DNA of 64,000 nt from Guillardia theta CCMP2712 (GCF_000315625.1 NW_005434561.1:62001-126000); one strand, 5' to 3'. Positions 18,535-22,599 are shown, numbered from the stretch's first letter. The notes: generated from the sequence alone by a model not told the origin. Translations and numbers: made by a program.

Positions 18535-21376
18535 TTATGTTACGCTGGTTGCAAAATTCAATGTAAGGTAATCAAATCGGCAGATTTTGTCATGGATGTA
18601 GTGATTGGAGAGGTTTGATAGTGAATTGGATCCTCCCTGTGAAATAGCGTTCAAGCATTCGATCTCGTACTTTGAATCTTGTATCAACATCTCTTCGAGC
18701 TCGTTCCTCCACCTAGGATTCTCTTTGATAACCTTGTAAGAGGTCTCAGATTGACCTCTCAAAAGATTACTTCTTCTCGCTCACCTTCCTTTCGCACATT
18801 CGAGAAATTCTTGCTCGGTCTCTTGACGACAACTCAAGTCTTAACGCTTTGGGTACTCCAAATACTTTCATGTCGTTGGAATGCAAACCAAGCCATCGCA
18901 TCGTAGGGCAACGAAGAAACTCTCTTTCGTGCTCTCGCGAGTGACTTCCAAACGCATATGTCAAAATAATCTCAACGCCATCTGGATCCCAGTCCGCAAT
19001 TCCATAAATCGGGAGATTGGGATGCGATTTGCTTAATCGGCTCAAGAGAATCCGTGTTTGCACATCTGGCAATCTCAATCTGAATCATTCTTACTTGAAA
19101 TTGTTTTTACCTGGGTAACCACAACCTGTCAACAGGATAGCTCTGCCTGCATATTTGCTGACAGCGTATGGAACGTTAGCAGCGATGGATATCTCAAGTG
19201 AAAGAGATTCTAAATAACCTTTCAATAAATTTGTCTGAATAAATTTGGGTTAGCAAGGAGCATCATTTTGCAACGTGCTGACCGTCACACAATCTTCGAA
19301 AGATGCATTCCTTTTCTACGACAAAAAGTGCATGGGCTTGGTCCACAAAAAGCTCTCTGCAACAACATGATGTGAACATTGGAGGCATTTTTCATGAAAA
19401 ATTGACATTTCATGTGAAAACGATGGAAGGGTTGTTGGTCCTGAGTGACAATGAATTAAATTTCCTTGCAAATCCTTCATGACAAGAGCTCCATAGACTA
19501 ATCCTTTGGAATACGAGACAATGTTGAGCTGAAACCTTGGGACATTACATATCCTCGCCAAAAGCTCTATTGCCTTGTCACTGAACAGATAATTCAATTA
19601 CAGATCAAAGTGGGAGAGCTTAGTGACAGACACCTGTTAATTTGTTTTCCAAACACCTTTCCATCAGCATAGAATATATCTGCAATCAAAGCTCAGATGC
19701 CTGTTTTAGATCCTAGTATCACAATTGTGCATGAACCTCGCTTCGTGGACGTTTTGTTGGCTTTCAGCAAGGAACATACCAACTGTGCAACTCTGAAGAA
19801 GCGAGCGCATCTGAGCAAATTCTTGGAACTCCTGCCTCGTAATGACAGAACACCAGAGGAAAATTTAAATCCATCTTTTGGATCTTCAAAATCTAAACAT
19901 TCGTTCGGAGAATCGTCCATGTACATTTGTCCTGACCGATATTTGATAGTCGGGAACTTGTCGTTGGCCAAAGCCCTAAAACAGTGCGCAACGATGGAAA
20001 GGACTCTGTCGAGAACTAGTTCACGCTGAGAATCTTTGATCGAATACTCTCTAAGCGGATCGGATGATTCAAAGGCATCCAGCGCATTGAAGACTTCCTC
20101 CTCGGTACTGAGCTATGTCAGAGTCTGTTCAAGTATACAATGCTTGCATACGTATCATCGAAATCCTTCATCCTGTTGAGAAGAAGCGATAATAAGGTAT
20201 TGCTTGATTCCATACCAAACGATTCAAACACATTAAATTTGTTCGAAATTTCTTTGTGGCACTGGTCCAAGCATAAGCATAGACTCTTCGCAAAGCTCTG
20301 ATGACTGCAGTTAAATTCATGGCAGATCACGCGAATGAGTCACCGGATGAACAATCTCTTCGCGAACTCTTTGTAACGACTCACTCCCCATTTCTGTGAT
20401 AGCTTGTCGAAACATGCTTGAGATCGTTGATGTTAATGTCGACAGTGGCACAGAATCACCCCCGGTTTCATTCCAGCTGATGTAGCAAGTAATTTCTGTG
20501 TTGTCCTCAAGTCGAGCTCTCCGTTCTGATCGTTTCACCCGATTTGTGTTGCCGTAAAAGCTGCACGGCGTTGAAATGTACTTTTCAAAGTAGGTCAGAA
20601 ACTTGTCTATGTTTTCGAAAGGAGATATGTTCATGGGAACGCAGTTAAGAAACGCAAAAATTTTGATACGTGACTCCGGCTTGCTGTCAGGATCATGAGC
20701 CTCACAACTGGTATGCAGTCCCACCCAGACATGAACCTCGGCACCTGCAACTTGTTTCATGATTCGATGACTTAACTCGCTCTTCTGATGTTCTGTCAGT
20801 CTTTGAAAGTTGGTCTCGAACGAATTGCGAACTTGGAAACCCCCATACACAACACAGAAGTTGCTTGCAACGGACTTAAGCCTCACACATACCGACTGTG
20901 GCCTTACTGGTCAAAACCAATGGAAATGATAAGCACAAAGCAGATGACTTACTGGATTCAGGCGCTGCAGAAGCACACAGAACTCTTCTAGTGCAGCATG
21001 TCCTTGCAGACATCCAACAGATCCATCGAAGGTCAAAATTAGGATATTCGATGACTGAGTGCCAACAGTTTGAAATGAAGAAAACTCCCCCTCAGTCTTT
21101 TCAATAAGTTAGACAAAACAAACATTGACGCAGAGAGCCTTTACTCACTTTTTCGTCATCATCAGCCATCCTGGCATTCTGGCAGATGCCGTTCGATACA
21201 AATGCTGACAGCCACGATTTTTCCTCCTCGATGGATTCGAACAGAAATCCTTCCCCGTCGTCCCCGATGCCGACTAGCCATTTGTCATTTCTCTGCTCGC
21301 AGATGATTTTAAAGTCTCGGCATCTTCTTCGGGTCGCCGCGTAGCTCAGCGCCTTGTGCATAGCTGCGCCGAGCAT
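18535..21376 (-). CDS. SPO11: Predicted TOPOVIBL(Top6B-like)-SPO11 fusion protein, roughly 760 aa, about 12 exons
   Basis: SPO11 part: STKRDIFY (catalytic Tyr codon 19669-19671), VPRFQLNIVSYSKGLVYG, VVEKE, TGCGYPD, IADWDPDGVEI, RWLG, KYEIE. B-like part: IGDDGEG, LQRLNP, IFAFLNCVP, HPSFAKSL. In-frame introns at 21097-21148, 20896-20952, 20298-20343 and 20108-20151. SPO11 identity is very strong; the fusion is a splicing prediction. Confidence 0.82.
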
Positions 21377-21543
21377 TTGGCGGGAAAGAAGTTTGTGGCT
21401 TTCACTCTAATAATATTTTATTAATAAAGGGTCGCCAAACTAAAAACCCCGTTCCCCTTCCTCCCCTTCCCTCTACGATTTTTCGTGCTCGGTAACCAGG
21501 TTGATATTTCGGCGCTGTGACGTGCCAAGGTTTGCCCATCAGG

Positions 21544-22245
21544 ATGGTCGAAGAAAATGATCACACAACGAAGAAGAAGACGGACGACGTCACGCTGCTT
21601 GCATCAGGCCTAGACGAAATGCTTGACGCCTCAGCCATATCTGGGGGCCTTCTCGACGAAGACTCTTGGTTTCTCTTGCGTGCTGAGTCCCTCCGGAGAA
21701 AGAACGTCCATGATGCCCAAGAGACGGTCACACAATCGCTGGACACGCAAGAGCTGAAGTTGAGCGAGATCCTCCCCACGGAGACAGGCTTGCAGACCAA
21801 GAGGAGGAGAGTGGAACGAGCTTGCGAGTTCTGCCGAAGGAGGAAGCTCAAGTGCGACGATCAGAGGCCCTGCTCCAGCTGCGCTGGGAGGATGACAGGC
21901 TGTAGAGACTGTCACAAGGGAGCTGAGTGGGAGGCGCAGCTCGCCGCGCTAGGCAAGAATGCTGGGCTCTACTGGAAGATGCGCCACAATGTTTCGCAGG
22001 CATGCGACCGTTGCAGGAAGCTCAAGTCCAAGTGTGGAGACACTCGACCATGCTGGCGCTGCGTGAAGAGCGGGTGTGCGGACAAGTGTGCGGACGAGGC
22101 CAAGGTCTCAAACTCATCGCAGACACCAGAGTCAGACTACTGGGGGAGTGACGGGGAATTCGATAGGGCGAAGCAGGAGTCGCCGCTGTCATCGTCCCCC
22201 GCCTCACCTGCCGTGTCGCTGGTCAACGATCACAAGCTCGAGTGA
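21544..22245 (+). CDS. Transcription factor with two Zn2Cys6 (GAL4-type) clusters, copy 1
   Basis: ACEFCRRRKLKCDDQRPCSSCAGRMTGC and ACDRCRKLKSKCGDTRPCWRCVKSGCADKC. Confidence 0.88.
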   Translation: MVEENDHTTKKKTDDVTLLASGLDEMLDASAISGGLLDEDSWFLLRAESLRRKNVHDAQETVTQSLDTQELKLSEILPTETGLQTKRRRVERACEFCRRRKLKCDDQRPCSSCAGRMTGCRDCHKGAEWEAQLAALGKNAGLYWKMRHNVSQACDRCRKLKSKCGDTRPCWRCVKSGCADKCADEAKVSNSSQTPESDYWGSDGEFDRAKQESPLSSSPASPAVSLVNDHKLE

Positions 22246-22279
22246 ATGAAAGAGCACGTGTGAGAGCCTTTTGTGTACT

Positions 22280-22599
22280 GAAGCTGTACCTGGAGGGATC
22301 GTTGAGGGCCTGGGCCTTCATCAAGCGCTCCATGTTAGCGGTGTAGCCGTAGGTTCCAGTGACAACGGCCATGGGGGAGGTGGTGAGGCGGTTGGAGATG
22401 ACGAGCTTCTCCACCTTGTCACCGAGGAGCTTCTTGTACCACTCGATGAGGTCCTTGAGGTTCTCCTTGGCCTTCTCCCTCCTCTTCTTCTCCTTCTTCT
22501 CCTCCTTGTCTCCGAACTTAAGGTCCTCCTTGGCTGCGTTCATGAGCTTGTGGTCCTCGTACTCGTCCATGTGCTGAACGGCGTACTCGTAAATGGGGT
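22280..22599 (-). pseudogene. Duplicated internal fragment of the GRP94/HSP90B1 gene
   Basis: Encodes [16 protein letters not shown]...LNDPSRYSF, near-identical to 26669-26988; no upstream in-frame ATG. Confidence 0.92.

What the first reader, a model, noticed from the sequence alone, without database searches (positions are those of the whole stretch)
18535..21376. Single-gene TOPOVIBL-SPO11 fusion: a candidate one-chain meiotic DSB enzyme
Seen: exons 21376-21149, 21096-20953, 20895-20344 and 20297-20152 splice in frame through GT-AG introns of 52, 57 and 46 nt into ~357 aa. A 44-nt phase-2 intron (20151-20108, gtatgc...ctgac...ctcag) then joins ...MKDFDDT to TEEEVFNAL...RELVLDRVLSIVAHCFRALANDKFP, the SPO11 N-terminal helices. 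That SPO11 exon has an in-frame TAG just upstream and no ATG before these helices, so it needs an upstream exon. The upstream part carries Top6B-family motifs in the right order: IGDDGEG (GHKL DxGxG), LEEFCVLLQRLNP, AEVHVWVG, KIFAFLNCVP (cf. RFANxxP), EITCYISW, MFRQAITEM, HPSFAKSL (cf. MTOPVIB PDLARSI). Established: SPO11 and its B-like partner (MTOPVIB/TOPOVIBL, yeast Rec102) are normally separate genes, the B C-terminal helix docks on the A N-terminus, and B-A fusions are known in prokaryotic Topo VIII. Inference: a natural B-A fusion with a short acidic linker that fixes stoichiometry and points to meiotic machinery in this protist. I cannot confirm it is unreported.
Basis: partly seen in the sequence, partly recalled or inferred. 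Interest (0 to 1): 0.95.

Follow-up and report, generated by a model that had tools for sequence, protein, structure and literature searches.

The report
Algal SPO11 fused to its partner
In the alga Guillardia theta and its relatives, the enzyme that cuts chromosomes to start meiotic recombination (SPO11) is encoded in one gene with what looks like its normally separate partner subunit, an arrangement I found described in no other eukaryote.

Summary
Observation confirmed; the fusion is well supported. The window is Guillardia theta CCMP2712. Twelve exons (21376-18535) splice through eleven GT-AG introns of 44-61 nt into a stop-free 758-aa protein, with SPO11 (catalytic Tyr, Glu, DxD intact) at the C-terminus. 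The locus is almost silent in the RNA runs laid; no read crosses the junction. Comparative DNA carries the case. Three further lineages from metagenomes have the same order. In two, the junction intron (106-547 nt) always joins in frame with equal spacing, while stand-alone start and stop codons are not conserved. In the third (three independent assemblies) there is no junction intron: one 437-codon exon runs from the upstream part's last helices through the linker to SPO11's catalytic tyrosine. That the upstream half is a TOPOVIBL is likely but not proven. Two exon groups align at the expected Top6B motifs above all shuffles, and three C-terminal helices are predicted, but no Pfam, PDB or fold search names it. 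ATP-binding motifs are degenerate and H2TH is absent. NCBI annotates two separate genes. I found no paper on a natural SPO11-TOPOVIBL fusion. The scan had not noted it on other DNA.

The parts
21149..21376 (-). Exon 1: ATG; degenerate GHKL N-box helix (no Glu/Asn) and G1-like DDGEG
   Evidence: the exon-1 group aligns on Top6B residues 57-107 (N-box to G1), above 40/40 shuffles; Hanusia P0002:1-76 is 64% identical
20953..21096 (-). Exon 2: end of the GHKL-like fold (G3-like strand and following helix)
   Evidence: the matching exon of lineages A/C lands on the Top6B G3 strand, score not above shuffles
20344..20895 (-). Exon 3: short link (no H2TH) and most of the transducer-like domain; largely unannotated in NCBI
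   Evidence: 62% identical to Hanusia; strand/helix order, low confidence
20152..20297 (-). Exon 4: last helices of the B-like half (SFAKSL motif); holds the ATG (20208) that NCBI uses as SPO11 start
   Evidence: homologous to residues 126-176 of the fused lineage C exon, score 25.5, 0/30 shuffles
20108..20151 (-). Junction intron, 44 nt, phase 2, GT-AG
   Evidence: kept in strain L001; no intron at this junction in lineage C; no RNA read across it
19737..20107 (-). Exon 5: acidic linker, SPO11 N-terminal helices, start of the winged-helix domain
   Evidence: Pfam TP6A_N E=5e-4; hhalign to lineage C residues 228-348, 0/30 shuffles
19634..19679 (-). Exon 6: catalytic tyrosine motif (RDIFY, Tyr484 of the model)
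   Evidence: RDVYY in the other lineages
19407..19580 (-). Exon 7: end of the winged helix and beta region
19283..19356 (-). Exon 8: Toprim glutamate motif (VEKE)
19219..19234 (-). Exon 9: 16-nt micro-exon (DKFIE), inferred; absent from the NCBI model
   Evidence: keeps the frame; matches DNFVER of lineage A
19111..19157 (-). Exon 10: GCGYP motif
18785..19065 (-). Exon 11: Toprim DxD motif (DWDPDG)
   Evidence: Pfam TOP6A-Spo11_Toprim E=6e-22
18535..18732 (-). Exon 12: C-terminal Toprim part (EIECL) and TAA stop
   Evidence: Pfam E=4e-5

Best explanation
One gene encodes a single chain: an N-terminal, ATPase-degenerate Top6B-like (TOPOVIBL-type) half, a flexible linker, and a catalytically intact SPO11. 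The fusion is shared by G. theta and at least three related lineages, so it is old and maintained. Shown: the reading frame, the intronless junction in lineage C, intact SPO11 active-site motifs, near silence in the RNA runs laid. Inferred: the last helices of the B half fold back on SPO11's N-terminal helices within the same chain, forming the 1:1 unit that mouse SPO11 and TOP6BL form as two proteins. Two such chains dimerise on DNA through the SPO11 halves and cut both strands through phosphotyrosine links to start meiotic recombination, without ATP-driven strand passage. The fusion fixes co-expression and stoichiometry, and removes the free B C-terminus that binds REC114 in mouse, so recruitment must use another surface (linker or SPO11 N-terminus).
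For: In frame, 758 aa, 11 GT-AG introns. Lineage C: 437-codon exon without stop or intron across the junction in three assemblies, with no Met before residue 347. Lineages A and B: in-frame junction intron in every locus, with the same 30-nt spliced spacing although the intron sits 2 nt apart; this spacing equals the unspliced spacing of lineage C. In L021 a stop kills the only stand-alone ATG. G. theta exon 4 is homologous to the pre-linker part of the fused exon. The Hanusia model joins exon 1 and exon 3 homologues to SPO11. Top6B-like motifs at the expected places. Predicted long helix plus two helices, disordered linker, then Top6A/Spo11 fold. G. theta has a separate canonical TOP6B (PMC11302465). 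1:1 unit and dimer-dependent cutting in mouse (PMC11922745, PMC11922746). A haploid-diploid cycle in cryptophytes (PMC7486100).
Against: No RNA read or cDNA crosses the G. theta junction. No Pfam, PDB sequence, Foldseek, VIA or Atlas search names the B half. Most exons do not beat shuffles against Top6B, and one beat them at a wrong place. The exon-1 and exon-3 homologies between G. theta and lineages A/C are weak by score. The intramolecular interface could not be inspected. SPO11-1 versus -2 versus -3 was not resolved with labelled references.
Confidence: 0.76

Rival explanations
1. Two adjacent genes, as NCBI annotates: a B-like gene ending in the 44-nt stretch and a SPO11 starting at an ATG inside exon 4; the in-frame intron is a coincidence.
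For: NCBI has a 132-aa gene and a separate 410-aa SPO11 starting at 20208. A stop follows 48 nt after the anchor if the intron is kept. No junction read.
Against: SPO11 would have to start inside the other gene's last coding exon, in the same frame. Lineage C has no stop, intron or Met at the junction. L021 has no stand-alone ATG. Stop and start positions differ in every lineage while the spliced frame does not.
Confidence: 0.04
2. The gene is one chain, but the N-terminal half is not Top6B-derived; it is a lineage-specific extension, and a true TOPOVIBL is elsewhere or lost.
For: No significant database or fold match for any upstream exon. The profile tests used only three haloarchaeal Top6B sequences and were mostly at chance level.
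Against: Best local hits fall on the N-box/G1 and on the last transducer strand (GPMIVLVHIVS on GPAVIMIHVAS), above all shuffles. Two more exons land on the G3 strand and on the first transducer strands once the target is cut into domains. IPSVAKSI resembles IPEVSRSL of 2ZBK chain B (by eye). Such loss of detectable similarity is typical of TOPOVIBL (PMC9665070).
Confidence: 0.1
3. The chain is a non-meiotic, Topo VIII-like single-chain topoisomerase used in vegetative cells.
For: B-A fusions are active topoisomerases in prokaryotes, one of them without ATP (PMC4117785). DDGEG is kept in G. theta and Hanusia.
Against: N-box Glu/Asn and the G2 loop are missing, G1 is eroded in lineages A and C, and there is no H2TH. 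The gene is silent while its neighbours are well expressed. The species has a canonical TOP6B (PMC11302465). The A half is long-branched from archaeal Top6A and groups with eukaryotic sequences.
Confidence: 0.05
4. A fused gene with a second output: in lineages that keep the junction intron, intron retention yields a free B half, or an internal start yields free SPO11, as a regulatory switch like SPO11 alpha/beta.
For: A stop lies 9-48 nt past the anchor in all intron-bearing loci, and in-frame ATGs lie near the junction in G. theta and lineage B. Conserved SPO11 splice variants exist in plants and mammals (PMC9665070).
Against: Early stops are expected in any intron; stop and ATG positions are not conserved; lineage C cannot do this.
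Confidence: 0.05

Closest known systems
Meiotic TopoVI-like complex: SPO11 with TOPOVIBL/TOP6BL (mouse), MTOPVIB (Arabidopsis), Rec102/Rec104 (yeast)
   Same: SPO11 winged-helix and Toprim domains with Tyr, Glu and DxD; B-like half with degenerate GHKL motifs, no H2TH and three C-terminal helices next to SPO11's N-terminal helix; near silence in the RNA runs laid.
   Different: One gene and one chain instead of two or three; no free B C-terminal domain of the REC114-binding kind; three lineages carry an insertion with a CxxC...H..H motif in the transducer.
DNA topoisomerase VIII (Gadelle et al. 2014, PMC4117785)
   Same: Type IIB B and A subunits fused in the order B-A.
   Different: Topo VIII is prokaryotic, on plasmids and integrated elements, and forms a separate divergent clade. 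Here the gene is nuclear and intron-rich, the A half groups with eukaryotic SPO11-like sequences and the ATP motifs are degenerate. Most likely an independent, convergent fusion (inference).
Canonical Topo VI (archaeal Top6A/Top6B; plant and algal SPO11-3/TOP6B)
   Same: A-half fold (VIA Z 12.0, rmsd 2.4 over 107 residues to 2ZBK_A); traces of B motifs in the same order.
   Different: Topo VI B keeps all four Bergerat motifs and H2TH, and the subunits are separate; G. theta has its own such TOP6B.

Membership tests
SPO11/Top6A | Winged-helix (TP6A_N) and Toprim domains | tested here: met
   Pfam PF04406 and PF21180; fold matches to 2ZBK_A, 1D3Y, 2Q2E_A, 8URU_A
SPO11/Top6A | Catalytic Tyr, Toprim Glu and DxD | tested here: met
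   RDIFY, VEKE, DWD in the model; conserved in relatives
Meiotic SPO11 (SPO11-1/-2, not SPO11-3) | Phylogenetic placement outside the TOP6A/SPO11-3 clade | tested here: inconclusive
   Tree without labelled eukaryotic references; the cryptophyte-like clade (99/99) is far from archaeal Top6A and unresolved among eukaryotic rows. NCBI names it meiosis-specific; PMC9665070 lists SPO11-1 for cryptophytes
Meiotic SPO11 (SPO11-1/-2, not SPO11-3) | Expressed and required at meiosis; forms protein-linked breaks | not testable with these tools
   Only near silence in the RNA runs laid was seen
TOPOVIBL/MTOPVIB | GHKL-like fold at the N-terminus | tested here: inconclusive
   Exon-1 group aligns on N-box/G1, score 22.7, 0/40 shuffles, HH probability only 3%; no PDB hit; the joined domain was not folded
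TOPOVIBL/MTOPVIB | Transducer domain | tested here: inconclusive
   Last strand aligns at the right place in lineages A/B/C, 0/40 shuffles twice; the G. theta exon 3 model had pLDDT 39 and no meaningful fold match
TOPOVIBL/MTOPVIB | Three C-terminal helices (3H) that bind SPO11 | tested here: inconclusive
   Helices 99-137, 139-156 and 159-178 predicted in the fused lineage C exon, pLDDT about 50-65; contact with SPO11 could not be inspected; no PDB hit
TOPOVIBL/MTOPVIB | No H2TH domain; Bergerat motifs often degenerate | tested here: met
   Only about 25 residues lie between the putative last GHKL strand and the first transducer helix; N-box Glu/Asn and G2 are absent; G1 is eroded in lineages A and C. 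Depends on the domain assignment above
Canonical Top6B | All four ATP-binding motifs and H2TH | tested here: not met
   criterion from PMC11302465
Topo VIII | B and A fused in one polypeptide | tested here: met
Topo VIII | [quoted passage not shown] | tested here: not met
   Nuclear, intron-rich eukaryotic gene between eukaryotic neighbours
Topo VIII | Belongs to the Topo VIII clade | not tested
   No Topo VIII sequence was in hand; the SPO11 half found only Top6A on plasmids

The most novel reading that the evidence does not exclude
The first natural single-chain SPO11-TOPOVIBL known in eukaryotes, fixed across a cryptophyte clade, which has lost the free B C-terminus used for REC114 binding and, in some lineages, gained a zinc-finger-like insertion. 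It would be a self-contained meiotic cutter with its own mode of recruitment and an easier subject for structure and biochemistry than the two-chain complexes.
Probability: 0.7. Interest if true: 0.85.

Novelty: new variant of a known kind. Interest (0 to 1): 0.76.

Why it matters
SPO11 and its B-like partner are described as separate genes (yeast even splits the partner in two), and the partner is so divergent that it is undetected in many lineages. This locus shows the opposite outcome, fusion, and suggests that missing partners elsewhere may hide as unannotated exons 5' of SPO11. It supplies a candidate cryptophyte TOPOVIBL and a marker for the poorly seen sexual stage of an abundant algal group. 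A natural one-chain 1:1 unit makes open questions testable: what the B half does without ATP, whether weak dimerisation still limits cutting, and how the enzyme is recruited without the C-terminal REC114-binding helix. It also corrects a public annotation.

Tried and rejected
RNA evidence: four runs were laid; the locus had only a few scattered reads and one unspliced 221-nt contig, with no joint. Pfam on each upstream exon of G. theta and of lineages A and C: nothing meaningful. PDB sequence searches with single exons and exon profiles: only chance hits, such as a viral replicase cofactor at E 0.05, rejected. ESM Atlas by features: noise or blank. Single-sequence fold of exon 3: pLDDT 39, Foldseek and VIA matches meaningless. 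A fragment alignment on exon 3 (A4) was wrong and discarded. Intron-poor SPO11 proteins (P0025 cluster) first looked like spliced transcripts but proved to be genomic variants that keep the junction intron. The Hanusia model lacks exons 2, 4, 5 and the catalytic Tyr, so it is used only for order and adjacency. More distant SPO11 loci (L008, L038) end before the junction. The genome scan for Top6B partners returned one eukaryotic-looking contig, and a viral-contig scan returned nothing. Lineage C as a processed copy or chimera was rejected: it keeps other introns and is the same in three assemblies.

Full report
Source. The SPO11 half is identical to NCBI protein EKX36265.1 / XP_005823245.1, 'meiosis-specific transesterase' of Guillardia theta CCMP2712, scaffold JH993077.1. 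The window is therefore the nuclear genome of this cryptophyte.

Observation. Extending the model gives 12 exons, 11 GT-AG introns of 44-61 nt, like the 43-47-nt introns seen spliced in the neighbouring gene, and a 758-aa product with catalytic Tyr, Toprim Glu and DxD intact. A related strain keeps all splice sites and has a 5-nt indel only in intron 1. The SPO11 exon has no start codon of its own. The window alone is not decisive, because NCBI starts SPO11 at an ATG inside exon 4 (20208), uses a 38-nt intron, calls a separate 132-aa gene over exons 1-2 and leaves most of exon 3 unannotated. RNA does not settle it: both neighbours are well covered, the locus has only scattered reads, and no joint was seen.

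Relatives. A search with exon 3 found the strain and one Hanusia phi model of 537 aa that joins homologues of exons 1 and 3 to the C-terminal half of SPO11. It lacks several exons, so it shows order and adjacency only. Following the closest SPO11 hits into metagenome contigs gave three further lineages: A (L002, L004, L007, L020-L022, L025, L026, L034), B (L009-L012) and C (L035-L037). Their SPO11 winged-helix region is about 44-50% identical to G. theta's. A and C form one supported clade with G. theta, Hanusia and two unplaced rows (99/99); B is close to A and C by alignment. I take them for cryptophytes, but no record names them. In all of them a multi-exon gene lies directly 5' of SPO11 on the same strand, and its last part carries IPS(I/V)AKS(L/I)SLC, the homologue of G. 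theta exon 4 (score 25.5, above 30/30 shuffles).

The junction. In lineage A a phase-0 GT-AG intron of 106-251 nt, and in lineage B a phase-2 intron of 403-547 nt, join this part in frame to the SPO11 N-terminus in every locus that covers it. The introns sit 2 nt apart, yet the spliced spacing is the same in both, 30 nt. Read-through stops vary, and the possible stand-alone ATGs lie at different places. In L021 a stop removes the only one, leaving no Met until just before the catalytic Tyr. Lineage C is decisive: in three independent assemblies one exon of 437 codons, with no stop, no intron and no Met before residue 347, runs from the upstream helices through the linker (SRSLQHLVEVSDKDLP) and the SPO11 N-terminal helix to RDVYY and the Toprim Glu. 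Its spacing matches the predicted spliced joins of A and B residue for residue. It keeps other introns, so it is no processed copy. Whether C lost the intron or the others gained theirs, the coding frame is continuous. That G. theta makes the same fused transcript is an inference from this, and a strong one.

What the upstream half is. No library names it. Exon-by-exon profile comparison with three haloarchaeal Top6B proteins placed the exon-1 group on the N-box to G1 region and the GPMIVLVHIVS exon of lineages A/B on the last transducer strand GPAVIMIHVAS, each above 40/40 shuffles in the full 820-aa target; six other groups were not above chance. With the target cut into domains, two more exons fell on the G3 strand and on the first transducer strands, at chance-level scores, and one group beat its shuffles at a wrong place, which shows the limit of the control. 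IPSVAKSI resembles IPEVSRSL in the C-terminal helix of S. shibatae Top6B (by eye). An AlphaFold model of the fused lineage C exon (mean pLDDT 53) shows a long helix and two shorter ones, a disordered linker, the SPO11 N-terminal helix and a confident winged helix. Only the SPO11 part finds its fold, at VIA Z 12.0, rmsd 2.4, 107 residues to 2ZBK_A. The layout fits the 'three helices' that Brinkmeier et al. describe as the main surviving feature of divergent TOPOVIBL (PMC9665070). N-box Glu/Asn and G2 are missing, G1 is kept in G. theta and Hanusia but eroded in A and C, and there is no room for H2TH. G. theta has a separate TOP6B with all ATP motifs (PMC11302465). I put the TOPOVIBL identity at about 0.85-0.9, on motif order and context and not on a significant match.

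How it most likely works. Mouse SPO11-TOP6BL is a 1:1 unit that cuts only as a 2:2 dimer, and TOP6BL raises DNA-end binding (PMC11922745, PMC11922746). The fused chain would be that unit in one piece: B-half helices dock on the SPO11 N-terminal helix in cis, two chains pair on DNA, and each Tyr attacks one strand. Degenerate ATP motifs argue against gated strand passage. Because the B C-terminus is tied to SPO11, the free C-terminal helix that binds REC114 in mouse (PMC9671922) cannot exist in that form. Cryptophytes have haploid and diploid stages (PMC7486100), which fits a gene that is nearly silent in the runs laid. All of this paragraph beyond the cited facts is inference.

Novelty. Fused B-A type IIB enzymes are known only as prokaryotic Topo VIII (PMC4117785). 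Seven full-text searches and term look-ups in the two phylogenetic surveys and a 2025 review found no natural SPO11-TOPOVIBL fusion. The supplements of PMC9665070 were not held and most subscription papers are not searched, so prior mention cannot be excluded. The range beyond these lineages is unknown: more distant loci end before the junction. I class it as a new variant of a known kind.

Limits set by the operators. Reads were laid on 4,501 letters. The spliced model was searched exon by exon by reference; the joined search and the joined fold were left out, and exons were joined in scripts only to check the frame.

Noticed in passing
window 21517-22245 (+): Zn2Cys6-cluster gene divergent from the fusion's ATG, only 141 bp away; it is covered by RNA contigs while the SPO11 gene is not, so a shared promoter region seems to work in one direction only.
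   Followed up: partly
window 21446: An RNA contig of the Zn-cluster gene has 165 letters before 21446 that lie on nothing here, another turns to the opposite strand there, and both differ from the reference at several places. Chimera, strain difference or something else; unexplained.
   Followed up: no
window 22171-22300: The 3' end of the HSP90-like gene (- strand) runs into the 3' part of the Zn-cluster gene; possible antisense overlap.
   Followed up: no
window 19104 and 19388: One DNA run lacks one base at each place; both lie in A-runs inside introns 10 and 7 and do not touch the frame.
   Followed up: yes
L035:3330-3570; L002:4650-5110; L012:655-830: Lineages A, B and C carry an insertion in the B half with CPLC and two later histidines, a possible zinc finger, absent from G. 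theta and Hanusia; Pfam gives only a chance-level Rad50 hook hit.
   Followed up: partly
L035:4059-4100; L002:5707-5745: The linker of lineages A-C is longer than G. theta's and holds a conserved DKDLP.KR.R basic patch, perhaps a nuclear localisation signal or partner site.
   Followed up: no
L002:5914-5997: GC-AG intron inside the SPO11 N-terminal helix of lineage A; the join is confirmed by the intronless lineage C sequence.
   Followed up: yes
L002, L004-L007, L025-L034 (SPO11 part): Close variants of lineage A (92-99% identical DNA) differ in which SPO11 introns they have; intron gain or loss seems to be under way.
   Followed up: partly
L014 (JBBAPG010000029.1): A SPO11-like gene 62% identical to a eukaryote-type protein sits on a 4.8-kb contig of a Polaromonas MAG; probably contamination.
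   Followed up: no
ESM Atlas row 2: A cluster of 950-aa Thorarchaeota Top6A proteins with extra helix-hairpin-helix domains; a long Top6A architecture that I did not examine.
   Followed up: no
L022:6679-9042 (-): The convergent neighbour in lineage A is a translational GTPase, eRF3-like by my reading; neighbours differ from G. theta's, so only the B-A order is conserved.
   Followed up: no
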